Position numbers and translations under genes: made by a program. From NCBI RefSeq assembly GCF_006345805.1, contig NC_042997.1, positions 44,888,001-44,952,000 on the forward strand: a stretch of DNA of 64,000 nt. Reading direction: 5' to 3'. The notes below the pieces were generated by a model, which ran no database searches, had not been told where the DNA came from, and saw only the letters and a program-made list of their open reading frames with translations. Of this stretch, positions 800-64,000 are shown one piece after another (the first letter of the stretch is position 1; every line of letters begins with the position of its first letter). Source of the DNA: Octopus sinensis. Its lineage: Eukaryota.

Positions 800-1631
800 T
801 GATGATGATGATGATTTCACATTTTGGCACAGGGCCAGCAATTTCAGGGGAGGGCTAAGTCAATTACATCAACTCCAGTGTTCAACTGGTATTAATTTTA
901 TCAATCTTGAAAGGACGAAAGGCAAAGTCGACCATGGTGGAATTTGAACTCAAAACATGAAGTTGGATGAAATGTTGCTAAGCATTTTGTCCAGCTAAGT
1001 ATTTTGATATAGGCAAAAGGCTACAAATTTTAGAGGCAACAGTATTTTAACTGACCTCAGTATTTGACCAGTACTTCATTTTATTGCCCCCAGAAGGATG
1101 AAAAGCAAAGAAAAAAAAACTTTGGTGAAATTTGAACAGAAAATGTAAATGAGTACAGCAAAAAACCACAAAATATTTTGCCCAATATTCTACCGATTCT
1201 ACCAATTCTTTGAAACAGTAATAATTTCATAAGGGTTGTAGTGTAGAAATGTATTTGATTGGATCCTGAATACTCTTCTGGTACTTTTGGAGATTGAAAG
1301 GCAGTGTTTGCCTGGCAGTATTTAAACTCAGAATATAAAGAAAGAAATATTTTGAGGTATTTTGTAAGGTCTAGCACTCAACTGTTTCTACCACTTCCCT
1401 GCTTTCATAATAATAATAATAAGAAGAATTGTTTCAAATTTTGGCACAAGGCCAGTAATTTTGAGGGTTGGGGTTAGTCAATATTGTCAACTTTAGCATT
1501 TAACCGGTTCTCTATTTTATTGACCACCCACAAAAGGATAAATCCTCAGCAGGATTTGAACTCTAAACGTCAAGAGTCAAATTCAGTGAGGCATTTTTTA
1601 ACATTATAATGATTCAGCCATTCCACTGATC

Positions 1632-3349: not shown

Positions 3350-4340
3350 TATAGGTGGGAAACTACCACCTGTGTCATCTCTTGTGAAAGGTAGGAGAGT
3401 CCAGTTTGCTGGACATTGTTGTAGAGCTGAAAATGAGGCGATTTCTACTCTTCTCCTCTGGAAGCCATCTACTCGCAATACCAGAGGGCGCACACTCTCC
3501 TACCCTGATGTAATCTCCAGGGATACAGGCATCCAGCAACAGGACCTCCGTAATGCCATGATGGACTGTGAAGTCTGGCGTAGCATGGTAAATTCCATTG
3601 TCTCGACCATAGTCGAACAATGATGATGATGATATATATATGCATATATCTATATATATATATATAAAAAGAAGAACAAGTATTTGGAATGAATAATTGA
3701 TATAATTGGCTATTCTCCTCCCGAAAATTTCCAACCTTCAACCTATGTTTGAAACAGTTGTTGTTGTTGTTATTATCATTAAGGCAGTTAGCAGGCAGAA
3801 TCATTAGCAAGAAAAACAAAATTCTTAGTGGTGTTTCTTCTGCCTTTCTGTTCTGAGTTCAAATTCCACCAAGGTCAACTTTGCATTTAGTCCAAAAGGG
3901 ACTGATAAAACAAGTGCCAGTTAAGCACTGACAATGGTCTATGCAATCGACTAGCCCCCTCCTACAAAATTTCAGGACTTGTGCCTATAGTAGAAAGAAT
4001 CATTATTACGTATTATTATTATTATCATTATTATTATTATTATTATTATTATTAAGTGGGCAGATTGTCAGAATCATCAGTGCATTAAAAATGCCTTGCT
4101 TTTTCATATTGGCTTTTTACATTTAAAGTTCAAATCTTGAGGGCACCGTCTTCCTCAATTTCTAAAGACACTTAAAGAAAATTACTTATAGTAACAATGA
4201 TATTTCCTTTATAATTTTATATTTCATTTGAAGGTGAAAGGTGTGTGTTGTGGAGAGGGGTATAACAAAGAAGGAAGGTTAATAAGTAAAATAAAGGTTA
4301 ATCAACGGTTACATTGATGGCCTGTAAACAAAATTTGTTA

Positions 4341-8688: not shown

Positions 8689-8952
8689 TTAAACAAATGA
8701 TGAAAAACCTGCGACTGGTGTTCGAGATCCTGCAGTGTTATTAACCATCATGTAGCCACCGTTAACGTTCATGCCGTAAGTGCTACTGTCAGCTTCCTCA
8801 CTGTCTGTGTAGTTGTAGGCGCTATACATTGATCGAGGATTGCTCTGTTGCCAAGACTGGCGGACTGTATCGTTAACGTACTGATTGTAGAATGTTCCAG
8901 CAGTTGTGGTATTTGTATTCTTTACAGTTTCATCTTCACTCTCGTCACTTGG
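8689..8952 (-). CDS. sdk: Sidekick, last coding exon (cytoplasmic C-terminus with PDZ-binding motif)
   Basis: Acceptor ...ttcctttcttttatag|CCA, phase 0 matching the upstream exon. Translates PSDESEDETVKNTNTTTAGTFYNQYVNDTVRQSWQQSNPRSMYSAYNYTDSEEADSSTYGMNVNGGYMMVNNTAGSRTPVAGFSSFV*. The -GFSSFV end and the 'YTDSE...NGG..VNN..SR.P..GFSSFV' pattern are Sidekick-diagnostic. Absent from the ORF track (no ATG). Confidence 0.96.
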   Translation of the reverse strand, partial: PSDESEDETVKNTNTTTAGTFYNQYVNDTVRQSWQQSNPRSMYSAYNYTDSEEADSSTYGMNVNGGYMMVNNTAGSRTPVAGFSSFV

Positions 8953-12087: not shown

Positions 12088-12211
12088 TTCTGTCAACTCT
12101 TCTAAATCTGGCTTTTCTGTTAAGCTACTACTGTTGTCATCTAACGGAGGTTTAGTGTCCAAATCATCATCAGAATATGTCACACTAGCAGGACTGGGTC
12201 GTGGTGGTGAT
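12088..12211 (-). CDS. sdk: Sidekick cytoplasmic exon (SPPRPSP motif)
   Basis: ttttgttcag|A...GAA|gtaagt; 124 nt, phase 2 to 0. Encodes SPPRPSPASVTYSDDDLDTKPPLDDNSSSLTEKPDLEELTE, matching the conserved Sdk SPPRPSP..Y.SD and SS.TEK motifs. Confidence 0.96.
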
Positions 12212-13360: not shown

Positions 13361-13683
13361 GTGTGTACAAACAGTGAGTACAAACTGTTCAAAAGTGAAA
13401 GAAATTAGGTTGGTATGAGGTAGGAAAAAAGTCTCATGTTTTGGGCAGTACCACCCCAAATGACAAAGTATTGCCAGGTAAGTTAAACTTGTCATCTGTG
13501 TGCTTGTTATCACCTTTGTATTTCCATTAGCTTTTCCCATGCTGGCATGGGTTGTACAAGACTTCTGAAAGCAGCACTCTACAGAGAAGTGGCCAAATGT
13601 CTTTCTTGATATCAACCCTCATTTGTTCTTCATATACTGAGAATCAGAATCGAAATCGATCAATGGAAATTGCAGCTGAGTTA

Positions 13684-14250
13684 CCAGTGCCGGTGGCATG
13701 TAAGAACGTGGCCGTTGCCAGCGCCGCCCCGACTGGCCTCGTGCCGGTGGCATGTAAAAAGCACCATCCGTTCGTGGTTGCTGCCAGCCTCGCCTGGCCC
13801 CCGTGCCAGTGGCACATAAAAAGCACCATCTGATCGTGGCCGTTGCCAGCCTCGCCTGGCCCCCGTGCCGGTGGCACATAAAAAGCACCATCCGATCGTG
13901 GCCGTTGCCAGCTTCATCTGGTTTCTGTGCTGGTGGCACGTAAAAAGCACCATCCGTTCGTGGTCGTTGCCAGCCTCGCCTGGCCCCCGTGCCGGTGGCA
14001 CATAAAAAGCACCATCTGATCGTGGCCGTTGCCAGCTTCGTCTGCTCTCCGTGCCGGTGGCACGTAAAAAGCACCCACTACACTCACAGAGTGGTTGGCG
14101 TTAGGAAGGGCATCCAGCCGTAGAAACATTGCCAGATAAAACTGGGCCTGGTGCAGCCTTCTGGCTTCCCAGACCCCAGTTGAACTGTCCAACCCATGCT
14201 AGCGTGGAAATCGGACGCTAAACAATGATGATGATGATGATGATGATGAT
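13684..14250 (+). mobile_element. (ATG)n-tailed retroposon carrying an internal 62-bp tandem array
   Basis: ggcac(a/g)taaaaagcaccatc unit recurs at 13749, 13811, 13873, 13935, 13997, 14059; fixed 3' body ...aacccatgctagc.tggaaa.cggacgctaaacgatgatgatg. Relatives at ~20440-20838, 26060-26360, 38400-38750, 56066-56465 (-), 57871-58127. Confidence 0.8.
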
Positions 14251-16686: not shown

Positions 16687-16825
16687 CTCATACTACGCAA
16701 AGAATTGGTACGATGACCGATAGTTCTCCGTGACTGACGTCGATCAAATGTGGAAAATCCTCCATCATCAAGTACTGGGGGCTCCAGTGGAAGAGGTGGG
16801 GTGTTACGTCTACGAATAGTTTCAC
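16687..16825 (-). CDS. sdk: Sidekick juxtamembrane cytoplasmic exon
   Basis: attttacag|GT...AG|gttagt; 139 nt, phase 1 to 2. Encodes ETIRRRNTPPLPLEPPVLDDGGFSTFDRRQSRRTIGHRTNSLRSM; LDDGGF resembles the Sdk LD.GGF motif; phases fit both neighbours. Confidence 0.93.
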
Positions 16826-19685: not shown

Positions 19686-20806
19686 TGCATATATACATAT
19701 GTACATACCTCTTACTAACTGTGAGTAGCTATGCAGATCCTGTACAAGAAACTGCTCTGATCATTCCCCATTCTCTCCCACTTTAACCCCTTCTCCTCTA
19801 GTATGAAACTGACACCCACATCTGCAAGGGTTCATAGTCCTTTGAGCTGCATTGTGATGTCGTCAGTGCTGGTAGCATAAAAAAGTACCCACTGCATACT
19901 GTGAAGTGGTTAGCTTTAGGAAGGACATAGAACATGCCAAAGTAGACGACAGAATGCAATGCAAACCTCAGACCCACGGGACCAGGTCAAACCATCCAAC
20001 CCATGCCAGCATAGAATGTGGATCTCTTAATTACCCAGTTTTTACAATAGTCGTACACTCTTTTACATAAATGATACAACCTTGACAGTATTTAAAAGCT
20101 ATTTCCCAAATCCATCTCAACATTTATCAATTACCCAGTCAGTTTGATGTTCAACTAGACTGCAGCTTTCACGAGTCAATGAATTCTACTCAAACATGAA
20201 GTATTTTGTAAAATTGTTTTAAGTATGCATGTATACCCTATTGACTTGCTAACATAGCATTAGGGTTCAGAAATGCAGTGGGTAAATTAAAAATCGATAA
20301 TTCAAAGCTTTTCATCTTCCTTAACCCTTTTGTTATCATATTTTCATTGAAAGACATTGCCTTTTTTTCAGTTAATTTTTAAAAATCAAAGAATCAAATC
20401 AAAATCGATGAACATCAATGGAATTTGTAGTTTTGTGGTACCAGTGCTGGTGGCACATAAGAAAACCATCTGAATGTGGCCGTAGCCAGTACCGCATTGA
20501 CTGGCCTCCGTGCTGGTGGCATGTAACAAACACCATCCGATTGTGGCCGTGCCAGCCTCGCCTGGCCTCCGTGCCGGTGGCACGTAAAAAAACACCATCC
20601 GAGCGTGGCTGTTTGCCAGCCTCGTCTGGCACCTGTGTCGGTGGCACATAAAAAGCACCCACTACACTCACGGAGTGGTTGGCGTTAGGAAGGGCATCCA
20701 GCTGTAGAAACACTGCCAGATCTGACTGGCCTGGTGCAGCCTTCGGGCTTCCCAGACCCCAGTTGAACCGTCCAACCCATGCTAGCATGGAAAGCGGACG
20801 TTAAAC

Positions 20807-21293: not shown

Positions 21294-21440
21294 GGGTCAT
21301 CTTTCGCTTCCTGCCAACCAGGACCAATAACAGCACAACAGCCATTATGACAATTAAACCACTCAGGGCAATAATAAGCAAGAACCACCATTCTGTATGA
21401 AACGGCCGTTCACTGAATGTACGCATTTTCCCAATTTCAC
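21294..21440 (-). CDS. sdk: Sidekick transmembrane exon
   Basis: ttttctccatag|GT...C|gtaagt; 147 nt, phase 1 to 1. Encodes EIGKMRTFSERPFHTEWWFLLIIALSGLIVIMAVVLLLVLVGRKRKMT: PF..EWWFL motif, hydrophobic helix and RKRK stop-transfer. Not in the ORF track. Confidence 0.96.
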
Positions 21441-24523: not shown

Positions 24524-24697
24524 CTTTTTCTGGATCTTGTATCAACATAGGTTTAGATGGTTCACTTGGAGGTCCAATTCCAAGCCAATTGTAGGCAAGC
24601 ACACGGAATTGGTACACTTTGCCAGTATCTAAGCTGTGAATATTAAGCAATGCACCAGTCTGTGGTGATTCCTTCAACAAAATATCAGTCCATTTTC
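24524..24697 (-). CDS. sdk: Sidekick, C-terminal half of the membrane-proximal fibronectin type III repeat
   Basis: tacattttcag|GA...G|gtattt; 174 nt, phase 1 to 1. Encodes KWTDILLKESPQTGALLNIHSLDTGKVYQFRVLAYNWLGIGPPSEPSKPMLIQDPEK, with the FN3 signature L..G..Y.FRV.A.N..G.G.PS. Confidence 0.95.
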
Positions 24698-27600
24698 CTG
24701 AAAATGTAACGATAAAAATGAAATACAAAAATATAATCTAGATAACATGCTTTAGTTAATTACAAATATACAAGCTGAATTATAAAAATATAAATTTTAG
24801 AAACTAAAGTGATGGAAAAAAATGTGAAAAATGTGAAATAAGAAAAATAATTTTTAAAAAGATCACAAAAACTACAATACAAATAGATAAGCATTTTCTA
24901 GTTACTTTGTGCAAAATTTTCAAACACCTATCAGAGGTTTAGTGAATATAGAAATAACATTTGAAATCCTATGGATTTACACATTACTAATGAAAGTATA
25001 CAGCATGTATATCCAATAATAAAGATCAGAAAAAAACAAAACAAAACAAAACAAATGAAAATGTTATTTCAGTTATGAAGAATACGGTATCTTATTGTTC
25101 ATTGGTTCTTCATCTTATGCATGCAAATGTATACATGTTTGTGTAGCTATGCAGAGGCATTAATATTTTGAAAGATGTACATTTTAATCCTAAATAAAGT
25201 ATTTTGCTTTAAAATCTAATTTGCTAATTTTGAAAGACATATCACTTCAAGTACAGACTCGTAAATGTTTTGTTTTGAACAATTCATGTTACAAGATGCT
25301 CCTCCTTAATATTAATTTCATTTATTTCTTAATTATAAATTAACGGAGAGACTAACTGACAACTAAATTTCAACATTAAATTCTGAGCCAGAACCACAAT
25401 ATATTGTTTGTATATTCTTCCAAATAATGTCCTATCAAATCTAATTATTACTCACAAAGTCAGTTTGATACAGGATTTATAATATCCCAATATACTTTTA
25501 AATATTATGAGCAAATAAATAAACAAAGTATATATTTTCTTCAGATACTTGTGGTAGTGGGAGTTAAGGGTACCGTTTAAGGAGGATAATATTACAATGA
25601 CACTTCTAGTGCTTGCCCTATTTCAACTTATTTTCAAGGTTATAATTAAATCACTAATTGTTTTTTAATAAATGCCAACATTTGCTTACACTTAGGCTTG
25701 AATGAAAATTTGGAGAACAGCTAAATTTGTGAGCAAATTTCAATTCTATATTGAAAGCAAAGTCACTTCTCTTCCATAGCTATTGTCTTTAGAAAGGAAA
25801 CAAAACAAAATAAAACATGAACATTACTATGTCATTCCATTCTCCTACACATGGCATTTAATTGCAAGGAGTTGATGGTATAAAATAGAAATGAGCTGTG
25901 TGAGAGTGTGACCTGATTCCATTGTGGAAATAGCTATTTCAACCACTTCAGTTAAATATAGCATTTGTTTTATCAACTGCTGTTCAACTTTATATTACTA
26001 CATACATGTTATGAATCTCAAATACAACGTCCAGTATCATATGAAATATTCTAATTACTGCCGTAAAAAGCACCATCTGTTCAGGGCCGTTGCCAGCCTC
26101 GCATGGCCCCCGTGCCGGTGGCACAAAAAAAGCACCATCCGATCGTGGCCGTTTGCCAGACTCGTCTGGCACGTAAAAAGCACCTACTACACTCATGGAG
26201 TGGTTGGCATTAGGAAGGGCATCCAGCCGTAGAAACATTGCCAGATCAAACTGGGCCTGGTGCAGCCTTCTGGCTTCCCAGACCCCAGTTGAACCGTCCA
26301 ACCCATGCTAGCATGGAAAGCAGACGCTGAACGATGATGATGATGATGATGATGATGATGTATGGGAAATATATTTCACTTTTACTAAAATATTCAAACT
26401 GTGACATAGTATGATTTTTATAATTGCCTTGGGGATTTAATCTGCAGTGGTTTTGTAATGGGTTTCTAAAATAGGTTTGAAGCTCATATGGGAACTGTCT
26501 TGGAGCATCGGTGATGGAACTGAAACTACATTCTAAGCCAGGAGCCCACCTCTACTCAACACTGCTCCCCTATAACACTAAAACACTAATATTTCTCTAA
26601 CCTTCTACCTCATAGTCTAAGAAGGAATTTGAACCAGATACTGTTAACTAATAAAACACTTGATAATTTTAGTGTGCTATTATTATGTTCAGTGGTGAAC
26701 TGTGCACTTTGTAATACCATTCGTAATCACATAAACCAAACCAACCAATGTGCCATTTCTAGAGCCACTGTTCAATATTTGTTACTGGATGCTGTTTGCA
26801 TGTTGGCTGGCGGTTAAGAAAAGTCTGTCAAATTCATCAAACAAACCATCTCAATCAGACATAGTCGAATTCTGAACTGCAAAGTGCACACCAAAAAAAA
26901 ATAAACATGTATTTAATACAAATGCAAGGCAACTGAAAAAGGCTCTGGGTGGTCACTTGACCATGTAGAAATAGTGACTAAATTTCCTTCCACTCACATC
27001 CTACTGTGTTAAAAAAGGAAAATGAAAACACAAATAATAGTGAGATATACTAAAATGCAGGACATTCACAACTGTAAAATCCTTGTTTAAGGTCTGTTGG
27101 ATCAGAGCTGACTTGGAGCTAAATAATAAAATGTATTTAGATATAGCTGGTATTAAACATAGTAAAATCTTAAGGAAATTTTTAATTTAAAGATGTGTAA
27201 AATATTTGACAAGATAGCATCATAAGTGCTGAGGCTAAATGGTTAATGTTTAAGCAGCTCAAATGAAGGAATGAAGAATATCCTTTTTCATTTTCCACAC
27301 TATAACCATTGTGCTATCTTTTGAAAAAACATTGGATTATGCCTCCAAAACTGTAAAAGTTTTGTAGTTTTCCACAATGCTACAATACTAAAAGGCACTT
27401 GAAATGATTTTGTTGTTACAAGTGTATGTAATATATGGCAGCTAATTGGATAGCATCTCTCTCTGAGCTGCACCTACTGAGGAAGTTGAACACTGCAAAA
27501 CAACAAAATACAAACTAATTTTAGAGAGCTCCTGCTGATTTGCAGTTTTGAGTTCCTCTTACGGTATAGTATCTATCAATATTTAGAATTAAATGAAAGA

Positions 27601-28122
27601 TCAATTTGTGACTGTCTATCATGGCTACATGGCAATGCTGGTGACAAGACATAAATTTGCTACTTCATAGCTGGTTATTCAAAATCTATCAACTGATTAT
27701 TGCACAGCTTGTTATCTGATTATCTATTAATTAAAATCTTTCATATCATTTAAAACTCACGAGAGATGAGTAAGCTGTCTGCTAAGTTACAATTAATTCA
27801 TAAACAAGAGTTAAGAGGTTAATATCAGACAGCCAACAATGAGGCTACCTTTGAAACTTGCTTGTTGTAACATACATCATTATTCAGTGTGTGGTTTTAG
27901 AAAAGTAAATTGTGAAACATGTCTAATGCTGCTGGTTGTTATTCTTTCTACTTATAACAACATCTAACTAGTTTGATGTGGCAGGAATACTGAGTAAAAT
28001 TAACTGACCTAGAAATTAAGGCTTAATTGGAAAGGATTTGAGTTGGAGGTGAAAAGAAAAATTGTGTATGAGTAAATGATTATGATGCTATAAATGAATA
28101 AGTTCAATATATCAGAACTGAC

Positions 28123-28188
28123 CTCTGATAGTTGTAGAGTTTTTAACACTTTCTCTTTTCTTGCGAGCTGCTTGCATGCTTAGAGGAT
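28123..28188 (-). CDS. sdk: Candidate 66-nt symmetric cassette exon of sdk (DPLSMQAARKKRESVKNSTTIR)
   Basis: Acceptor ttaactgttctcttcag|, donor GAG|gtcagt; 66 nt, open in phase 1, the phase of the host intron. No transcript evidence available. Confidence 0.6.
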
Positions 28189-28762
28189 CTGAAGAGAACA
28201 GTTAAATACAACGATATCAAGACAAAACAAACATGCTAAATTTACGTATAAAATATGTGCAGCCAGCAGAGCAGCTTTCTCTTTTTTTTTTTTTTGTCAT
28301 TTTCAGTAACTAGAATATTAAAAACAAAGCTTGAGTTGCACAAAGAAAATACAAAAACAAAGAAAAACAAACAAATTAGAAAAGTAATAAAAATTAAATT
28401 TTCAAAAAGTTAATCATGCAGAAACTAAGAGGGAACTCAGAAACATTCAACATCAAAATATAAAAAGACATTTATTCCTAAATATGGAAAGTAGAAAAAA
28501 GAAAAAAAAGGTAATTTAAATAAATGTTGCTGTTTGTATTATTATTACTATCATTATTTGTGGCAAAAACTGGGTGAATGGACAAGTGGTTGTAGAACAG
28601 AGACCAACTGTTGGAGGAGTGCTTGTGTCTTTAGTGGTCAGGGTGACCCAGAATCTGTGAGCTTCTTTGATTGGTCCTATTTTGAAGTTCTCCTACTTGA
28701 AGAGGACTGCATCATCATTGTGTCCACATATCAAGAATACTATATATATATATATATATAAT

Positions 28763-34642: not shown

Positions 34643-35907
34643 TATCAGGCTGAGTAAAATGTAAGCAACGTTTTGAAACATGAAATTCATCACAATATAT
34701 TTCAAAAATGCAGAAATTTTAATCATCGAAATAAGTACCATTACAATCAACACATTTTTTTCATCAAGTTACAAGTTTGTTTATTTCAGTGACACAGAAA
34801 GCTGGAGTTCTAGAGCTGAGGAACTCTTTGAATACACTTTCAGCATTAGTTTGATATTTTTAACTCCTCTCACAGGAAACCATCTAGGTGCTTGAAAAAG
34901 TGGTAGTCAGTAGAAGAAAGGTCTGGGTAAGAACTTTGAAGCCAAGTTCCCTCAACTTCTGGAGTGTCAATAGTGAAATGTTTGGCTGAGCATTGTCATG
35001 AAGAATGATTGGCTCACTTCTGTTGACCAGTCTGGGATGGAGGAGTAGCAGTTTTTCATTCATTCTGGCAATTTCATGGTAATATATTTCTGCAGTAATA
35101 GTTTTTCTGGGTTTTAAGAAGCTATAGTGGATGAGTCCAGCAGTACACCACCAAACAGTCACCATAACCTTCTTTTTGAAGAGTTTAGGTTTAGGGAAAA
35201 GGTTTTTGGTGCATCCTTTTTGTCTAACCACTGCGAAGAACGTTTTTTATCATCATACTGAATCCACTTTTCATTGCAAGCTACAATACAGTTGAGAAAT
35301 GGATCGGTCTGGTTACGGAGAAGAAGTGACAAGCAAATTTCATATTTGTGCTTTTTCTGATTTTCATTCAAATCGTGTGGTACTCATTTGTCAAGCTTTT
35401 TTGATTTTCTAATCGCATGCAAATGGTTACAGGTAGTTTTCTGGCTAACTTTAAGTTCTTTTACCAGTTCTTGAGTGGTTTTACATGGATCTTTCTCAAT
35501 GATGGTCCTTGATTGACCATCATCGATGACAGATGGGCGTCCATTATGCTCACAATCTTCAAGTCTCAGGTCTCCATTGAGAAATCGTTTAAACCATTTT
35601 CGAGCTGACCACTCACTGGTCATTTCCTCACCAAACATTTCGTTGATATCACGACCAGTTTCAATTGCATTATGCACCTCTTTTTGAAGTTGAATAGCAA
35701 AATTGCTTGAATGTCACGCTTTGATATTTTCATTTCAGATGATTGTAACAAGAGTGAAAAAAATATCAATGTTAATTTAGTAATACACTTGGGTGAGTCT
35801 ATGTTTGTGTTATCAGACAATAGCAAAAAAAGTGCTTAAAAAAATTCAAAACTCTGGCACAAACTCATCATGGTTCAAAACGTTGCTTCCTTTTACACAA
35901 CCGGATA
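34643..35907 (-). mobile_element. Full-length degraded mariner DNA transposon (~1.26 kb)
   Basis: TA-flanked imperfect TIRs (tatcaggctgagtaaaatgtaagcaacgttttga / tcaaaacgttgcttccttttacacaaccggata). Frameshifted transposase fragments: HTH 'ARKWFKRF..GD..LED..H.GRPS', 'IVACNEKWIQYD', 'VWW...G.IHY..L....TIT...Y', 'ILHDNAQP'. Confidence 0.92.
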
Positions 35908-38900
35908 GTTCAGTGCAGTGGCATAAAATGCCTACACATAGTTAAGCAGAAAGGAAATACATTGTATTGAAATATGAACCTTCAAACTTTTCATACAATC
36001 ATTTTATTCGGCAGTATTATTTAACATATTCATGAAGAAAAAAAGAAAAATAGAAACAGGATGGGGTTGTGAGATTGATAAGAACAAAACACAATTGTGA
36101 TCATAATATGTATATTTCCTCTTGAAAGAGTAATTGTGGCTTATTTATCCTTGTAAAAAGCTATATCCTCTTTAGTGAATTTAGTTATTGTTGCTTATAT
36201 AATAACTAACAAGGGTAATATTGGTTCCAAATTTTAGCACAAAGCCAGCAAGTTTGGGGGAGAGGAAATTCGATTACATCAACCCCAGTGCTCAACTGGT
36301 ACTTATTTTATTGAGGATGAAAGGTAAAGTTGAACTTAGACTGTAGAGATGGATGAAATGTTGCTAAGCATTTTGCCCGGCATGCTAACAATTCTGCCAG
36401 CCTGCTGTCTCTAACAAGGGAAGAGAAAATAGCAAGAATAGTAGGGGTTTCAGCTTTTATTTTTGTATTTGTCAGAAGTGGAAGAGAAGAGGTCATTTTT
36501 GTTATAGGCCTTTTCAAACTTGTCTTATTTTCTTTTCTATTTTACTTGCTGGGTTGCAAGACAAATTCTTCAAACAGAGCCAACTGGGAGGGAGACCTAG
36601 GGGTAGACCAAGCGTGAGATGGGTGAATAATACCCATAGTCTCAGTTGGTTATGCTTAAGAACCCAGTAGGATGGTTGCTTCTGATAGGACCCTATCCTA
36701 TCAGTACTTGAGGACTCTATATCCCCTCCAAGGAATAGTGGTTGGTGAAGATGGCTGGATGAGTTTAGGGAAATGAGCAGAGCCCATGGCCTACATTAGT
36801 CCTTTGAGACCAGTGAGATTGATGGACATAACATTTCACTTAAACTGTTGCAAGTCATCATCTGCTGGAAAGACATGGAAGGGAGTTCAAGAAGGTTTTA
36901 TTCCTGGGAATAAAAGATTATGAGGTTAGTAAGGGACTTGGATATACGAAATGTATGAAATGGAATTACAGATATCATATGCTTGTACGGGATAATATTT
37001 ACAAAGGGTCACAATGAAATTTAGACAGCATTGAGAAAGTAGCTAACATAATGTTGAAAAATAACACATGATTAATAAGAGTGGGATTGATCTGAGATCA
37101 ATTAGAAATGTGTATTGGCATAACTGTGCAGTCAAGAAGTTTGCTTTACAGCTGCACGGTTCAGTCCTATTGTATGTATCTTCAATTATGATCTCAGGTT
37201 GCCTTGTGAGTGAATTTTATAAGTGGAAATTGAGTGGAAGCTTGTCAAAGGAATCATTCATGTTGTTAAGTGGTGGACTTAATCCATCACTCAGTGTAAC
37301 AATCTAGTCTAGTGGTTCCTCCCTAGGAAGTCCACAAATCTAGTATTGGGAAGGGACTCTGTGAACTAAGTTTAACAGTTCAAGAGGATGCACAGTAAGA
37401 CTGATAAAGATAAACTTTCGAGAATTCAAAGTCAAAAAGTGTATTTGGAAACAAAAAGTTTATAAGGAATTACAGGCTCAAATTCTTTGTCCCTAAATTA
37501 TCGACATTACACAGATAACTTCACAAAGGGAGATAGGAACTAAATATTCAGTGAATTTTACTGATACTATCTGTTTTGGAGGATATAAAAGTGGTTTCTC
37601 TGAACTGATGTCTTGATTCTAGTGAATCTTTCTTTTAAGGGCTTTGCATGAGGATGGTAGGGTGTACCTCTTCCGTGTTGTACTCACTGATATTCTAAAC
37701 ACTCTTTAAACTTACAACTGATAAATTGTGGATCATTGTAAGAAATATTTCCGTTTTTTGAAATTCCATGCAGATGATCATATGATGAGTTTCAGTGACT
37801 TTTTGAGAAACATTCTCTGAACAATGAGATAATACTGTATCTACATTCTTAATGTTTCTCTGAAGTTTAACAGACACATGAAATCTACATGTAGTTCTCA
37901 CATGTCTAAGTATTATAAACATTACCAAGGATTCTAGTAACTCATGCAGTTCAAGTGACATACATATCAGACAATTCCTAATTTTTGACTTATGTTTTTG
38001 ACAAAGTTGTGCTACCATTATTTAATCCTTCTTTGTTTTTATGTTTCCCATTCTAGCATGGCACTCATAAGTAATGTCTAAAACTTTTGGTCTTGATATA
38101 AAAAGAATGAGAATTTAATTTCTTCATAGAATGATACTTAATTCCTTGGTAAGCTCTTGTTTTATAGGCAAATATGTTTAAATAGTTGAATTTTTCTAGT
38201 TACCAATTCACAATTTATGTAATGGAATCCTCATCTGAATGTTTTAACAAATGAGATAAAGCCATGGCTTTGAGAATCACGTTTGAAATTACAAAAATGA
38301 CATCTCATTTATGATAATTATTCTTTGTTAACATATTCTGTTGTTGTTGTTGCCAACCCCCTTTGCTTGTGAAGACATGTTGGGGCAAGCGAAATCGAAA
38401 TCGAATTGAACCAGCCAGGATCCCTGGTCTGGTGGTACGTAAAAAGCACTATCCGACTCGTGGCCGATGCCAGCACCGCCTCGACTGGCTTCCGTGCCGG
38501 TGGCACATAAAATACACCAATCTGACCGTGGCCGTTGCCAGCCCCGCCTGGCACCTGTGCAGGTGGCACGTAAAAAGCACCCACTACACTCACGGAGTGG
38601 TTGGCGTTAGGAAGGGCATCCAGCTGTAGAAACATTGCCAAATTAGACTGGAGCCTGGTGCAGCCTTCTGGCTTCCCAGAACCCCGGTCGAACCGTCCAA
38701 CCCATGCTAGCATGGAGAACGGACGTTAAACGACGATGATGATGATGATGTAACAAACTGATATGACAGTACAATTACTGGAGTGTAATTGCTGTTTATA
38801 AACAGTAGTCTAAGAAGCAAGATCTGGCTAGATTGAGTATAAAACAGGAAGGCTATTTGGGCCGGAGATGGCCAGTTTAAATACTAAAAAATTAAAGAAA

Positions 38901-49786: not shown

Positions 49787-51106
49787 TACACATAGATATA
49801 TATATATAATATATATATATATACTGTATGTGTATGTATGTATGTACGTTATATATATATAATTATATATAGTATATATATATATAATATATTACATATA
49901 TATATATATATTATATATGCATGTGGGTGTGTGTATAATATATCGATATAATGAGTGTGTATGTACAAATTTTGTCATTGTTTGTTTGAGTTATGCATAC
50001 ACTTATTTACTATTCACTTAATTCGGATTAAAAATTGTTATTTTTTTTTCTTTGTTTAATAGAAATTGTGGAATGGCAATCCTGCAAGCTGAGAAAATAT
50101 GTTGAGGCTCACCACAGTCACAAACCTTCCTATATCCCTTCTTGTCACCTGAAAATCAAAACATTTGTCACAAGTATGGAGAAGCCGTTCTTGGAAGTTG
50201 GAATAACATTTCATCTCTTTCTATATTTGTGTGGGTTTTTTGAAGTTTTAAGATTCTTTAAAAACACATTGGACTATTTATACAGATACGTGTGTGTGCA
50301 TGTACATATAGATACATATGAATTTATGTAAGTGAATATATGTGTGCGTATTTAGATAAATTTGCATGGAGCTGAGCCACACTGTTATTAAATACACACA
50401 ACACCTATTGAATGTGTTGAATATCATTTTTCACTTCCCAGTCACGCATACACACACACATATACACACACATACAACCATATGAATGTAAATCACTCAT
50501 GGTGGGATATGAACCCACAACCTCTGGATTAAAAGTCCAAAATGTTATCTTCTGAGCTACAGGGACATACAAGATACATATATATACACAAAACATAAAC
50601 ATGTACAAATTCTGGTGAATTAGAAAATAGTGGTGATTGAAATTTTATAAATAGAATTATAGACCTTCAATGTTTATTGACTACAGAAAATAGTCAAATT
50701 TTAGGGCACATAAACCCCTGTAATAGAAAATGGTAAAGAATGGGTGTTAAGGCCAATTTTTTTCCATTACAGGAGTTTAGATGCCCTGATACTATTTTTT
50801 ATAATTATATACTGCCTTTTAAGACCAACATGTTTGAATTGTAACTGTTGCAATAGCAGCCCTACTATAAAACGGTACAATCTTTTCAGGGCCTTAACTT
50901 GATATCCCTCAGTATGGCCGTTTAATGATTTCTTTTATAAATAAATTGTTTAAAATAGAGTTAAGTCAGATATGAACAATCTCTATTTCAAGGTCTTATT
51001 GGATAATCATTTTCAGTATAGAAAATATTCTTTGAGTTAAGATCATAGTTTTGATGTTTATACCCTTTTTTTTGAAGGAGTAAGTATTCTCTGATATATA
51101 TATATA

Positions 51107-51967: not shown

Positions 51968-52067
51968 NNNNNNNNNNNNNNNNNNNNNNNNNNNNNNNNN
52001 NNNNNNNNNNNNNNNNNNNNNNNNNNNNNNNNNNNNNNNNNNNNNNNNNNNNNNNNNNNNNNNNNNN
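51968..52067. other. Assembly gap (100 N)
   Basis: Run of exactly 100 N, the usual placeholder for a gap of unknown size. Confidence 0.99.
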
Positions 52068-52168
52068 TCGTATCAATTGAGCAGAAAAAAAGAACAATCA
52101 CAACAAAAACAAACAAGCAAAGTTCCAAAAGATCTTAAGGTCTTTTTTTTTTTCCGTCTCCAACTTAC

Positions 52169-52293
52169 TTTCTGGGTCCCTAGGCTGGTATGCATGTGGT
52201 TCACGAGTCAACAATGGAACCTCTACATGGTAGTTTGATCTGCTATATTTGTACTCTGGTGCTCCATCTCCAGCATGGCCTTGGCCGTGATGG
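52169..52293 (-). other. Exon-like segment of unknown affiliation (125 nt)
   Basis: ttctttagtttgttttag|...GAAA|gtaagt. Unique, non-repetitive sequence with higher GC; one frame fully open (HHGQGHAGDGAPEYKYSRSNYHVEVPLLTREPHAYQPRDPE). Confidence 0.35.
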
Positions 52294-52449
52294 CTAAAAC
52301 AAACTAAAGAACTACCATCTTGAGAAATGAAGATCGCATTGGACAAGGTAAGTCCAAAGTGTACAAAAAGACGGAAGTTTACAGGCGGAACACTTTTGAA
52401 CAGAGATCTTTTCAAGCAGGGCAGAACTGTGGCTAACAACAACAACAGC

Positions 52450-54385: not shown

Positions 54386-57300
54386 ATCCATGGTCTGAAA
54401 AATATTAGCTAATGACATATCTCTTCATGTCAGTTATAGACAGTTCTGTTATCTTATTTCCATCAAGTTCTGTATTCTTACCGGCATGTTACATCTCTGG
54501 AATTAAGCTAATTTAGTGGACTTCAGTCAGTAGGAGTGCCTGTGTGGTAAGTAGCTAGCTAACCAGCCACATGGTTCCGGGTTCAGTCCCACTGCGTGGC
54601 ATCTGGGGCAAGTGTTTCTGCTATAGCCCCGGGCCGACCAATGCCTTGTGAGTAGATTTGGTAGACGGAAACTGAAAGAAGCCTGTCGTATATATGTATA
54701 TGTATATATATGTGTGTGTGTGGGGGGGAGTTTGCGTGTCTGTATTTGTCCCTCTAGCATTGCTTGACAACCGATGCTGGTGTGTTTACGTCCCTGTCAC
54801 TTAGTGGTTCAGCAAAAGAGACCGATAGAATAAGTACTGGGCTTACAAAGAATAAGTCCCGTGGTCGATTTGATCGACTAAAGGCGGTGCTCCAGCATGG
54901 CTGCAGTCAAATGACTGAAACAAGTAAAAGAGTAAAAGAGTAAAGAGAGTTTGCTATGTTAGCCATCTGACCATGTACAGCTGTTAAGTAAGCACATGGC
55001 TAAAATGTATAAATGATGACATTTTCACAGAAGAGTACTTTGTTTGAAATACCATTATTATCAATGCTGTTTAATGAGTGCTTTCTGAATTTTGTGTTTG
55101 AAATATGAGGACAGTGTACCAATGATATATTACACAAGAAATTTCAATAGCAGTGCAGACGCTAAATATTCAAAGTGTCAAATTAATAACATTTTTGTTT
55201 TTAAGTTCAAGCACTTTTACTCGCATTGTAATACAGTGGGTTCTCTGCAAGTAAAAAACCTTGAAATAACATTTTAACCACATCCCATACCTCCCACATG
55301 TCCTTTATCAGTGATATTTTAAGGAAAAAAAAACAACAAACATGATTAAAAACTAATGAACGTAAAAATAAATAAATAAATAAAAAGGAAGGAAATCAGA
55401 GTAGTTTATAATGAAAATTTACAAGTTATTGTAAATAATGTTGGCTAAGAATCGTCTGGATTCACAGTCATTTGTAACTGACTGACCTAAACAGCACAAA
55501 TAATTAAGGTGATCTACAAAACATATTTGAAGTGACTAAAATTAGAGGGTAAACGAAGCAATGTATGAAGCGAAATAAAACAAGTTTATTTAAGCACTCT
55601 GGCTGGGAAACGACAGGTTTAATTAATCCCATGAGTAATAGAAAAAATTTCATAAAATGTACCCCTCAAATCATTCCACAAACTGGTATAATGACAGACA
55701 TAAACACTGGAGTTATCCTTCGAAATAGCTTCAAGAAATGCACTGCAAACCAATTGGGTTGTTGGGACATTGCTGAAAACATATCCTCTTAAATATACTG
55801 AAGAGACGAGACACTAGAATAACTTCTATTTAGCTCCTAAAACCGAACAGAATGCTGTGATTTCCAGTGCAATACTGTGAAGGCACGTGGCTGTGTGGTT
55901 AAGGTGTTATACTCTTGACTGTAAGGTCATGGGTTCTATCAACAGACAATGTGGCACGTCGTATCTTTGAGTAATGGACTTATTTCACATTGTTCCAGTC
56001 TATTCAGCTGAAAATGAGACAAACTGGCATGCCATAGATTTGAACTCTCAGTTGCTTACATGTTTCATCATCATCATCATCATCATCGTTTAGCGTCCGC
56101 TTTCCATGCTGGCATGGGTTGGACGGTTCAACTGGGGTCTGGGAAGCCAAGAGGCTGCACCAGGCCCAGTCTGATCTGGCAATGTTTCTACGGCTGGATG
56201 CCCTTCCTAACGCCAACCACTCCATAAGTGTAGTGGGTGCTTTTTGCGTGCCACCTGCACAGGTGCCAGGCGAGGCTGGCAAACGGCCATGATCGGATGG
56301 TGCTTTTTATGTGCCACCGGCACGGGGGCCAGGCGAAGCTGGCAAACGGCCACGATCGGATGGTGCTTTTTATGTGCCACCGGCACGGGGGGCCAGGCGA
56401 GGCTGGCAACGGCCATGAACGGATGGTGCTTTTTATGTGCCACCGGCACCGAGGCGAGGCGAGGCTGGAATAAGCTTCAGCCTAAGTAGAATGTATACTC
56501 AAGGCACACCATAACTTAACCTAATGAAACACTCATGGTATATATATATATCTTTATCTTTCTCCTGGTTTCAGTCATTAAACTGCAGCCTTTCTCTCTC
56601 TCTCTCTCTGTGTTGCAGAGAGTTCCTGTATCTAAAACATCTTTGCAATACATTGATTTACTTTTATTTATCTATAATTTATTCATTTTTTTTTAATCTT
56701 TTAGAATGAAAAGAGGGCCAGGAATTAACTCCATTTCGTATTCAGATTTATAAGAAACTAGCATTAAAGACCTGTCGTTGCCGGGTCATAGTGCTAGTGT
56801 ATATATATGTGTATATATTACATATACATCTATATATATATGTCTACACATAAAATACAAAATAGAAAGTTATATCTTGATATCACTAGTGATAACAAAA
56901 CTCAAAATATATAACAGACTGGAATTGTTAGCCCGTCTCTTGTAATTTCGATCAATTGTATCTTGTCCTCCCTCTTGTATAGAAGTGTGGCTACAATCCA
57001 GCCTACCTCTACATCGGGGGGGGGGGCATTTTATGATATTGCTATGGGCTCACTCTAGGCAAGAAGTTGAACATTTTTTGCCCATGAAACTACATGGACC
57101 CTAAGTAAGGCATGTGTAAAATTTGAATGAAATTGGTTGTGTAGTTCTCAAGTTTTAGGGAAACACACAGACAGACAGACATACAGACAGACACATATTC
57201 TCAGTTTTACATATATAAAGATAATGGTATTTTACAACTAAATGCTTCCCATATTGATGCACTCATGCATGCGTGGCCTAAAGAGTTCTAATTGATATAG

Positions 57301-63032: not shown

Positions 63033-64000
63033 CACCGTCACCGGTGATATCACTGTGACCAACCAGGCTATCAGATGATGTTACACATCGCTGGTCACAA
63101 TGCGCTTCACATTGTTTTAGCCTTGAAATGATGCCACCCCACTGGCTAAGCGAGCAGACCAACAGAAGAAAGGGTGAGAGAAAGTTGTGGTGAAAGAGTA
63201 CAGCAGGGATCACCACCACCCCCTGCCAGAGCCTCGTGGAGTTTTAGGAGTTTTCGCTCAATAAACACTCACAACGCCCGGTCTGGGAATCGAAACCGCG
63301 ATCCTACGACCGCGAGTCTGCTGCCCTAACCACTAGGCCATTGCACACATATATATATATATGTATTTATATATAAGGGACTGAAACTCCTTGGGGTCCG
63401 CTGTGCTTGAGAAAAGGTCAAGCTAAGTAAAATAATGGTTGTCCTTGATTACAGGCATGCCCCCTTCACCCTTCATCCGCTGAACATTCCAATTCTTGCA
63501 GGCTCATGAGTGTTGGTGCCAAATAAAAAGCGCTCATACCAGTGCCATGTAAAAGTGCCCAGTAAACTCTGTAAAGTGGTTGGCATTAGGAAGGGCATCC
63601 AGTGGTAGAAACCATGCCAAAACAAAAATGGGAGCCCAGATAGCTCTTCAGCTGGCTAGCTCTGGTCAAACTGTCCAACCCATGCCCACATGGAAAACAG
63701 ACATTAAATGATGATGATGATGATGATATAATCTGTCCTACTGTTATTCTCTTACATATGTATTAGTATCAAAGTTTCTCAATTTCAACAATACTTGTAA
63801 ACAATGCACTCATCCAGTTACCCATCAACCAACTCATATGAAACACAGATATTTAAATCAACAATGTTTGTCCAATTAGTAGCAAAAACTTCCTATAGGC
63901 TTGTTTAAAATGTAACAAACAACAAGCAAGGTAGATAACTTCATTAAGGTCAGATGACAGAAATCTTTGGACACAATACACAATGCGAATGGGAGTTGAT

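What the first reader, a model, noticed from the sequence alone, without database searches (positions are those of the whole stretch)
28123..28188. Candidate cassette exon adding a furin site (RKKR) and N-glycan sequon to the membrane-proximal FN3 repeat of Sidekick
Seen: 66-nt exon with a good acceptor (ctgttctcttcag) and donor (GAG|gtcagt), open only as needed in phase 1, encoding DPLSMQAARKKR-ESVKNSTTIR immediately before the KW strand of the last FN3 repeat; YGCY/UGC clusters (ctgctctgctggctgc) lie ~70-90 nt upstream. Known: R-X-K/R-R is the furin consensus, N-S-T is a glycosylation sequon, and L1/NrCAM-family adhesion molecules are furin-cut within an FN3 repeat. Inference: splicing could switch octopus Sdk between an intact homophilic adhesion receptor and a cleavable/sheddable form. 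I know of no description of this for Sidekick.
Basis: partly seen in the sequence, partly recalled or inferred. Interest (0 to 1): 0.75.

Follow-up and report, generated by a model that had tools for sequence, protein, structure and literature searches.

The report
Real alternative Sidekick exon with convertase motif
The 66-base segment is a real, alternatively spliced exon of the octopus Sidekick adhesion gene, already present in public gene models. It inserts a flexible 22-residue loop carrying a conserved R-x-K-R protease motif into the last fibronectin domain, and whether that motif is actually cut has never been tested.

Summary
Window 28188..28123 (minus strand) is a 66-nt AG/GT-bounded segment, open only in phase 1, encoding (D)PLSMQAARKKRESVKNSTTIR just before the C' strand (GKWTDILL) of Sidekick's 13th FN3 domain.

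It is a real exon. RefSeq isoforms of Octopus bimaculoides (X1/X2 with, X3 without) and O. sinensis (X6 vs X8, X5 vs X7, X1-3 vs X4) differ by exactly these 22 residues. Homologous exons occur in Argonauta, O. vulgaris, Sepia pharaonis and 14 full-length decapodiform RNA contigs.

Across cephalopods R-x-K-R is invariant in an otherwise poorly conserved exon. The N-S-T sequon is kept only in octopods. Two sacoglossan sea slugs carry R[KR]KR in the same loop. About 70 other Sidekicks have no such motif in FN13.

An AlphaFold model places the motif in a low-confidence loop between strands C and C'.

So "cassette exon" is supported and already annotated. "Furin site" is plausible and conserved but untested. 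"Sheddable" is doubtful, because L1-family precedents keep their fragments associated. The upstream YGCY cluster is not enriched.

The same intron holds two more annotated phase-1 cassette exons, A and B.

The parts
28123..28188 (-). Cassette exon C of Sidekick (66 nt, phase 1/1) encoding (D)PLSMQAARKKRESVKNSTTIR. Inserted into the C-C' loop of FN13.
   Evidence: Sequence and frame. 100% match to O. sinensis and O. bimaculoides isoforms that contain it. Isoforms lacking exactly these 22 aa. Homologues in Argonauta, Sepia and other decapodiforms.
28189..28213 (-). 3' splice site of exon C (pyrimidine-rich tract ...tatttaactgttctcttcag).
   Evidence: Rough PWM score 4.5, slightly above the constitutive FN13b acceptor at 4.0.
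28117..28122 (-). 5' splice site of exon C (GAG|gtcagt, with C at +3).
28144..28155 (-). Codons CGC AAG AAA AGA = R-K-K-R, the candidate proprotein-convertase site. The predicted scissile bond is R|E.
   Evidence: R-x-K-R is invariant in five cephalopod lineage sequences. Residues 52-60 of the model have pLDDT below 50.
28129..28137 (-). Codons AAC TCT ACA = N-S-T sequon.
   Evidence: Kept in Argonauta and absent in decapodiforms.
24524..24697 (-). Constitutive exon FN13b (174 nt, phase 1/1): (G)KWTDILLKESPQ...LIQDPEK, strands C' to G of the last FN3.
52169..52303 (-). Cassette exon A (135 nt, phase 1/1): (V)CFSHHGQGHAGDGAPEYKYSRSNYHVEVPLLTREPHAYQPRDPE. Same intron, same loop. Read-through of its donor to 52101 gives the truncated tail seen in O. 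bimaculoides isoform X4.
50113..50148 (-). Cassette exon B (36 nt, phase 1/1): (G/S)DKKGYRKVCDC. Same intron, same loop.
21294..21440 (-). Transmembrane exon (..ERPFHTEWWFLLIIALSGLIVIMAVVLLLVLVGRKRKMT).
8689..8952 (-). Last coding exon ending ...AGSRTPVAGFSSFV*, the Sidekick PDZ-binding C-terminus.
   Evidence: Identical to the O. bimaculoides Sdk C-terminus listed in PMC7479261.

Best explanation
Window 28188..28123 (minus strand) is a genuine, evolutionarily conserved, alternatively included coding exon of the octopus Sidekick gene. The sequence matches O. sinensis and O. vulgaris.

The exon lies in the more-than-39-kb phase-1 intron that splits the 13th, membrane-proximal FN3 domain between beta-strands C and C'. 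When included, it inserts 22 residues into the C-C' loop without disturbing the FN3 fold. The insert is a short helix followed by a disordered stretch that displays R-K-K-R|E-S.

The most likely function (inferred, not shown) is as follows. The motif is a substrate site for a furin-type proprotein convertase in the secretory pathway. Exon-containing Sidekick would then be converted into a two-chain receptor: a large N-terminal ectodomain fragment plus a C-terminal stub of half-FN13, TM and tail. Exon-skipped Sidekick would stay single-chain.

By analogy with L1, Tractin and SAX-7, the two chains probably stay non-covalently associated through the split FN3 sandwich. The effect would then be a weakened or releasable link rather than automatic shedding.

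Two neighbouring cassette exons (A, B) feed into the same loop. Alternative terminal exons truncate the protein at the same point. This intron is therefore a hotspot for remodelling the membrane-proximal end of the ectodomain.
For: Shown:
- Exon anatomy.
- It stands out among pseudo-exons.
- Gene identity as Sidekick.
- RefSeq isoform pairs that differ by exactly this exon: O. bimaculoides XP_052823500.1 vs XP_052823515.1, and O. sinensis X6/X8, X5/X7, X1/X4.
- 100% match of the window to these exons.
- Spliced RNA contigs from two SRA runs of cuttlefish contain the 63-nt homologue.
- Argonauta, O. vulgaris and S. pharaonis models, and 14 full-length decapodiform transcripts, all contain it.
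- Homology statistics.
- Only 7 of 23 exon columns are invariant among cephalopods, and 3 of those are the R, K and R of R-x-K-R. P1' is always acidic.
- Among 102 Sidekicks with a TM motif, R-x-[KR]-R occurs in FN13 only in cephalopods with the exon, in two sacoglossans (RSRKKR, RARRKR, same loop) and in one unidentified protein with an enlarged loop (RLRR).
- The Pfam fn3 match spans the insert.
- The AlphaFold model has a confident FN3 core, with the insert between strands C (34-41) and C' (67-73) and pLDDT below 50 for residues 52-60 (KKRESVKNS).

Precedent: L1-family cleavage at R-x-K-R-type sites in FnIII#3, with fragments that act together.
Against: - No protein-level evidence of cleavage exists for any Sidekick. 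The only reported SDK1 ectodomain cut is a juxtamembrane metalloprotease-regulated site (AVSA|QVEA) in human cells.
- Evidence for skipping is from Gnomon models only. I could not inspect junction reads.
- In decapodiforms all transcripts retrieved include the exon, so regulation may be octopod-specific or minor.
- A polybasic patch next to the membrane could serve other roles.
- An N-glycan five residues downstream (octopods) could hinder a convertase.
Confidence: 0.6

Rival explanations
1. The exon is real and alternative, but R-K-K-R is not a cleavage site. The basic, flexible insert instead tunes how the membrane-proximal FN3 interacts with the membrane, heparan sulphate or glycocalyx, or a cis partner. 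Alternatively it simply lengthens the loop.
For: The insert is rich in basic residues (R, K, K, R, K, R) and sits in the FN3 nearest the membrane. Sidekick FN3 domains are reported to associate with membranes (PMC7479261). Neighbouring exon B is also basic (DKKGYRKVCDC). No cleavage of Sidekick at such a site has been reported.
Against: Conservation is of the precise R-x-K-R spacing, with T tolerated at P3 and an acidic P1', rather than of overall charge. Independent lineages (sacoglossans, P0121) also show R-x-[KR]-R rather than just lysine-rich loops. The motif is in the least ordered part of the insert.
Confidence: 0.3
2. The exon is real but essentially constitutive. The exon-skipped RefSeq isoforms reflect rare mis-splicing or combinatorial model building, so there is no biologically used switch.
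For: All 14 full-length decapodiform transcripts and the Argonauta, O. vulgaris and S. pharaonis models include the exon. Gnomon can propagate combinations of independently supported events.
Against: Two independently annotated Octopus species both have skipped isoforms. The exon is symmetric (phase 1/1, 66 nt), so skipping preserves the frame and restores the ancestral short loop seen in other phyla. Two further optional exons lie in the same intron.
Confidence: 0.15
3. The segment is a chance pseudo-exon or annotation artefact in a long AT-rich intron.
For: From the site counts I estimate about 0.2-0.35 segments of this splice-site quality by chance in 39 kb. The donor has a non-consensus +3 C.
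Against: The spliced homologue is present in RNA contigs of distant cephalopods. The peptide homology peaks exactly here. It is annotated in four octopod genomes.
Confidence: 0.02

Closest known systems
L1-family IgSF adhesion molecules (vertebrate L1/NgCAM, C. elegans SAX-7, leech Tractin) cleaved at a basic site inside the third FN3 domain
   Same: A neural Ig+FN3 single-pass adhesion receptor. An R-x-K-R-type motif (SAX-7: RWKR) lies inside an FN3 domain of the ectodomain. Cleavage would give an N-terminal adhesive fragment and a membrane stub.
   Different: Different family (Sidekick: 6 Ig + 13 FN3). The site is in the last FN3, next to the membrane, rather than the third of five. Here the site is carried on an optional exon. 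Cleavage is demonstrated for L1/SAX-7/Tractin but not for Sidekick.
RefSeq Sidekick isoforms of Octopus bimaculoides (XP_052823500.1, XP_052823505.1, XP_052823515.1) and O. sinensis (XP_036356574.1 ... XP_036356608.1)
   Same: Identical sequence. These are the annotated products of this very locus or its orthologue, with and without the 22 residues.
   Different: They are database models without any functional annotation of the insert.
Human SDK1 ectodomain shedding (terminomics site AVSA|QVEA at residue 1998)
   Same: It shows that a Sidekick ectodomain can be proteolytically released near the membrane.
   Different: It is a metalloprotease-regulated, non-basic juxtamembrane site. It is not in an FN3 loop, not splice-dependent, and found in vertebrates.
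Sacoglossan sea-slug Sidekicks (Plakobranchus ocellatus GFN78220.1, Elysia marginata GFR99907.1)
   Same: A polybasic R[KR]KR in the same FN13 C-C' loop, immediately before the conserved W of strand C'.
   Different: The insert is about 8 residues. It is encoded at the 3' end of the FN13a exon (L002 10141..10186) rather than on a separate exon. Other gastropods and bivalves lack it, so it may be convergent.

Membership tests
Sidekick (Sdk) family | C-terminal PDZ-binding hexapeptide GFSSFV | tested here: met
   The window's last exon ends ...RTPVAGFSSFV*. This is identical to the O. bimaculoides Sdk entry in PMC7479261 Table 1.
Sidekick (Sdk) family | 6 Ig + 13 FN3 ectodomain, single TM, roughly 200-aa tail | tested here: met
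   The window holds only FN13b, TM and tail. Full-length orthologues identical over these exons are 2150-2230 aa with Ig/I-set and fn3 Pfam hits, and are named sidekick by NCBI.
Cassette (alternatively included) exon | Canonical AG/GT borders and length divisible by 3 with matching intron phases | tested here: met
   66 nt, phase 1/1, AG...GT.
Cassette (alternatively included) exon | Transcripts both with and without the exon | tested here: met
   RefSeq isoform pairs in two Octopus species differ by exactly these 22 aa. Inclusion was seen directly in spliced RNA contigs of cuttlefish. Skipping was seen only as Gnomon models. Read-level support could not be inspected.
Cassette (alternatively included) exon | Tissue- or stage-regulated inclusion; conserved flanking intronic elements | not testable with these tools
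   No RNA-seq read access and no second cephalopod genomic sequence for this intron (Argonauta locus too long to fetch). The YGCY cluster is not enriched. GCAUG x3 and a YCAY cluster are only mildly above background.
Furin / proprotein-convertase substrate site | R-X-[K/R]-R motif in a lumenal or extracellular segment | tested here: met
   RKKR in Octopus. RTKR in Argonauta, cuttlefish and the squid-like lineage. All lie in the ectodomain.
Furin / proprotein-convertase substrate site | Exposed, flexible context | tested here: met
   AlphaFold2 model: the insert lies between strands C and C', and residues 52-60 (KKRESVKNS) have pLDDT below 50 while the core is at or above 90. This is a prediction only.
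Furin / proprotein-convertase substrate site | Evolutionary constraint on the motif | tested here: met
   R, K and R are invariant among five cephalopod sequences whose exon is otherwise about 30-50% identical. The motif is absent from FN13 of about 70 other Sidekicks.
Furin / proprotein-convertase substrate site | Demonstrated convertase-dependent cleavage | not testable with these tools
   No experiment was possible. No literature report was found.
N-glycosylation sequon | N-X-[S/T], X not P, in the ectodomain, conserved | tested here: inconclusive
   N-S-T is present in Octopus and Argonauta. Its place is taken by A-V-S-T in cuttlefish and squid-like sequences, and it is absent in sacoglossans.
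L1-type intradomain FN3 cleavage | Fragments remain non-covalently associated and act together | not testable with these tools
   Reported for Tractin and SAX-7. For Sidekick it is only an inference from the split-FN3 geometry.

The most novel reading that the evidence does not exclude
Cephalopods have maintained a splice-gated proprotein-convertase site in the membrane-proximal FN3 of Sidekick since before the octopod-decapodiform split. Neurons would choose, by including exon C (and combining it with exons A and B in the same loop), between a covalently continuous adhesion receptor and a two-chain receptor. In the two-chain form the homophilic ectodomain can be released by force or by a second cut. 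This would be a post-transcriptional way to set the lifetime of Sidekick-mediated synaptic or tricellular adhesion. Sacoglossan slugs would have arrived at the same solution independently.
Probability: 0.3. Interest if true: 0.6.

Novelty: new member of a known kind. Interest (0 to 1): 0.45.

Why it matters
Sidekicks are homophilic receptors that specify synaptic layers in vertebrate retina and organise tricellular junctions in flies. Their ectodomain is regarded as a constant 6 Ig + 13 FN3 rod. According to the 2020 review, the significance of their splice variants is unknown.

A conserved, optional convertase motif in FN13 would add Sidekick to the group of IgSF adhesion molecules (L1 family) whose adhesive and signalling halves are separated by intradomain cleavage. 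It would also make that cleavage a splicing decision.

The idea is directly testable with a few constructs.

The practical result for the scan is more modest. The exon is real, but it is already in RefSeq. What is new is only the comparative evidence that the R-x-K-R is under constraint.

Tried and rejected
1. The first protein search, with the exon plus FN13b (80 aa), found nothing. This was a limit of the word index, not absence. Later searches with longer queries found the orthologues.
2. I searched the window for the upstream FN13a exon by ORF listing, regex and tblastn with cuttlefish and Octopus proteins. It is not present, so it lies beyond position 64000 or, less likely, in the 100-N gap at 51968..52067.
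3. The genomic contig L004 of a decapodiform (ENA ERZ21867824) contains only the FN12b exon, so it cannot be used to compare intron flanks.
4. The Argonauta hians locus could not be fetched because the gene spans 568 kb.
5. Looking up the SRA/ENA accessions in the paper library gave nothing, so the tissue of origin of the RNA contigs is unknown.
6. I rejected it as evidence.
7. The hypothesis that the Plakobranchus polybasic stretch is a separate micro-exon is rejected. It is contiguous with FN13a, and the donor follows CAG G|gtataa.
8. The chance pseudo-exon hypothesis is rejected (see rival explanations).

Full report
**What is at the coordinates.** On the minus strand, 28188..28123 is a 66-nt segment. 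It is preceded by a pyrimidine-rich tract ending ...ctgttctcttcag and followed by gtcagt. Two of its three frames contain stops. The open frame is the one required by a phase-1 intron and reads (D)PLSMQAARKKRESVKNSTTIR(G). The donor is decent but has a non-consensus C at +3. It contains only two strict YGCY motifs, against a background of 10 per kb on this strand, so it carries no weight.

**The gene.** The next downstream coding exon, 24697..24524 (174 nt, phase 1/1), encodes (G)KWTDILLKESPQTGALLNIHSLDTGKVYQFRVLAYNWLGIGPPSEPSKPMLIQDPEK, the second half of an fn3 domain. It is followed by:
- a transmembrane exon (21440..21294);
- cytoplasmic exons at 16825..16687 and 12211..12088;
- a last exon (8952..8692 plus stop) ending GFSSFV.

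A search with the spliced C-terminal 282 aa returned proteins named sidekick from spiders, sea slugs and vertebrates. The 2020 Sidekick review lists exactly this C-terminus for O. bimaculoides Sdk. The first half of FN13 is not in the window. The intron that contains the candidate is therefore longer than 39 kb.

**Is it more than chance?** Using a rough splice-site weight matrix (human-like frequencies from memory, so only a ranking device), I found 1241 frame-preserving, open AG..GT segments of 15-300 nt in the intron portion. The candidate is the only one whose acceptor and donor are both at least as good as its own. Across both strands and all three phases of the whole window, only one other, trivial 15-nt segment reaches that level. 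From the site counts I estimate about 0.2-0.35 such segments by chance in this intron. That is suggestive but not decisive.

**Homology and transcripts.**
- The C-terminal search found a Logan RNA contig (L001, SRR25158151), 77% identical to octopus. A cluster mate (P0019, L003, SRR21372860) came from a second run.
- Both are spliced across all the exons above. Between ...YLLQARKE and VWSTILLKESPQ they contain DPQSSQ(N/T)YRTKRETEAVSTKRG, a 63-nt homologue that starts ATCCTC and ends AGAG like the octopus exon. P0019 is identical in this region to the Sepia (Acanthosepion) pharaonis SDK model.
- Scanning that 22-aa peptide against all six frames of the 64-kb window puts the best hit exactly on the candidate. 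The score is 40 against a next best of 30, and only 2 of 20000 shuffled peptides reach it.
- A profile search of 1.84 billion cluster representatives returned a full-length Argonauta hians Sidekick. It has ...YLLQAKKQ DSLSMQAARTKRDNVKNSTIRG KWTDILL.

**Cassette status.** Using the Argonauta protein as query brought in the Octopus cluster. Its members settle the matter.

| Species | With exon C | Without exon C |
|---|---|---|
| O. bimaculoides | X1 (XP_052823500.1), X2 | X3 (XP_052823515.1), reads ...AKKQGKWTDILL |
| O. sinensis | X6 (C only) | X8 (none) |
| O. sinensis | X5 (B+C) | X7 (B only) |
| O. sinensis | X1-X3 (A+B+C) | X4 (A+B) |

The O. vulgaris model includes the exon. The window matches these proteins exon for exon at 100%. 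Exon A carries the O. sinensis-type residues GQGHAG...PHAYQ rather than the O. bimaculoides variants, so the window is O. sinensis or the near-identical O. vulgaris.

The exon is thus real, optional in annotated Octopus transcripts, and already public. I could not inspect the reads behind the skipped models. In decapodiforms all 14 full-length Logan transcripts contain the exon. The strength of regulation is therefore open.

**The same intron is a splicing hotspot.**
- Exon A (52303..52169, 135 nt) and exon B (50148..50113, 36 nt) are also phase 1/1 and feed into the same loop.
- Read-through of exon A's donor gives the truncated tail of O. bimaculoides X4.
- X5 of that species and X9 of O. 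sinensis also terminate right after FN13a. These isoforms lack the second half of FN13, the TM segment and the tail, so they may be secreted (inferred).

**Where the insert sits.** Pfam fn3 matches residues 11-91 of the skipped domain and 11-113 of the exon-containing domain, so the insert is internal to the domain. I built an AlphaFold2 model from a 16-sequence alignment; mean pLDDT is 84.8.
- The FN3 core is confident, with pLDDT of 90 or more for 75 residues.
- The insert lies between strand C (34-41) and strand C' (67-73).
- It has a short helix (45-52), followed by residues 52-60 (KKRESVKNS) with pLDDT below 50.

The R54|E55 bond would therefore be in the most flexible, exposed part.

**Is the R-x-K-R meaningful?**
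- Among Octopus, Argonauta, two cuttlefish and a squid-like lineage, only 7 of 23 exon columns are invariant: D1, R9, K11, R12, S, T and G. Three of these are the R, K and R of R-x-K-R. P3 varies between K and T, and P1' is always E or D.
- The N-S-T sequon is kept in Argonauta but is A-V-S-T in decapodiforms.
- Outside cephalopods, Haliotis, Pomacea, oysters, other gastropods, Lingula, arthropods, echinoderms and vertebrates have a short loop with no basic motif.
- Two sacoglossan slugs have RSRKKR and RARRKR at the same place. In Plakobranchus this is encoded at the 3' end of the FN13a exon rather than on a separate exon.
- One unidentified Sidekick (P0121) has an enlarged loop with RLRR.
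- In 102 Sidekicks with a recognisable TM motif, R-x-[KR]-R occurs in FN13 only in these cases, and always in this loop.

This pattern argues for selection on the motif itself. It is what one expects of a proprotein-convertase site.

**Mechanism and its limits.** The motif, its lumenal topology, its predicted exposure and its conservation meet the sequence-level criteria for a furin-type site. Cleavage itself is untested.

The L1 family is the closest precedent. SAX-7 is cut at RWKR in FnIII#3. The site is conserved in vertebrate L1, and the furin fragments of leech Tractin bind each other and mediate adhesion only together. A cut in the C-C' loop would leave strands A-B-C on one chain and C'-E-F-G on the other. 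I therefore expect a non-covalent two-chain receptor rather than immediate shedding.

The only Sidekick proteolysis I found in the literature is a metalloprotease-regulated juxtamembrane cut in human SDK1. Searches for Sidekick with furin or proprotein convertase, or with octopus and alternative splicing, found no description of this exon or site.

A non-proteolytic role for the basic loop remains a serious rival. Candidates are membrane or glycan binding, or spacing.

**Verdict.** The convertase-site reading is plausible and now has comparative support, but it is unproven. The glycan sequon is lineage-restricted, and the proposed splicing-regulator motif is not supported.

Noticed in passing
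window 52169..52303 (-) and 50113..50148 (-): Two further annotated phase-1/1 cassette exons lie in the same intron and the same FN13 C-C' loop. Exon A is 45 aa, His/acidic-rich with one Cys. Exon B is (G/S)DKKGYRKVCDC, basic with two Cys. O. sinensis RefSeq lists six of the eight A/B/C combinations. Neither is present in the Argonauta model or the decapodiform transcripts retrieved.
   Followed up: partly
window 52101..52168 (-): Read-through of exon A's donor (GAAA|gtaagt) continues in frame as SKLETEKKKDLKIFWNFACLFLL*. This matches the tail of O. bimaculoides isoform X4 and would truncate the protein after FN13a. O. bimaculoides X5 and O. sinensis X9 also end right after FN13a. Whether these forms are secreted is inferred only.
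   Followed up: partly
window 51968..52067: A 100-base run of N (assembly gap) lies just downstream of exon A, inside the intron.
   Followed up: no
window 28052..28097 (-) and 28420, 28236, 28179 (-): A cluster of five YCAY motifs lies 25-70 nt downstream of exon C's donor. In 300 nt there are 9, against about 4.5 expected by my estimate. Three GCAUG motifs (one full UGCAUG) lie within 300 nt upstream or in the exon, against about 0.5 expected from the 1.4-per-kb background. These are mild enrichments and possible Nova- or Rbfox-type elements. Conservation could not be tested.
   Followed up: partly
window 34887..35713 (-): A decayed mariner/Mos1-type transposon lies in the intron. Pfam hits are HTH_48 (E 3e-10) and Transposase_1 (E 3e-17), on ORF fragments in different frames.
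   Followed up: yes
window, many places, e.g. 20400..20800, 26000..26310, 38320..38725, 13650..14200, 56000..56480: A highly repeated element gives similar pseudo-ORFs (HGLDGSTGVWEARRLHQ..., RPRSDGAFYVPPA...) on both strands. A second family gives (LANQPHGSGFSPTAWHLGQVSSAIAPGRPMPCEWIW..., TSPSLSGSAKETDRISTGLTKNKSRGRFARLK...). They are probably SINE-like repeats filling the introns. Pfam finds nothing in one copy.
   Followed up: partly
P0121 (protein): An unidentified 2232-aa Sidekick has a roughly 28-residue enlarged FN13 C-C' loop containing RLRR. This is a third lineage with a basic R-x-R-R motif in this loop. The organism is unknown.
   Followed up: no
L001 about 950..990; L003 about 3544..3596: Both Logan RNA contigs carry a single-base frameshift that splits the Sidekick ORF into two called genes. 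In L003 it is in a poly-A run. These look like assembly errors, because full-length cluster mates (e.g. P0171, P0302-P0310) are uninterrupted.
   Followed up: partly
outside the window (N-terminus of the Octopus isoforms): An 8-residue segment EYITSLHK after the signal peptide is present or absent among the O. bimaculoides and O. sinensis isoforms (e.g. X1 vs X2). O. sinensis X2 differs from X1 by one residue (QQPPSG vs QQQAPSG). These are further small alternative events in the same gene.
   Followed up: no
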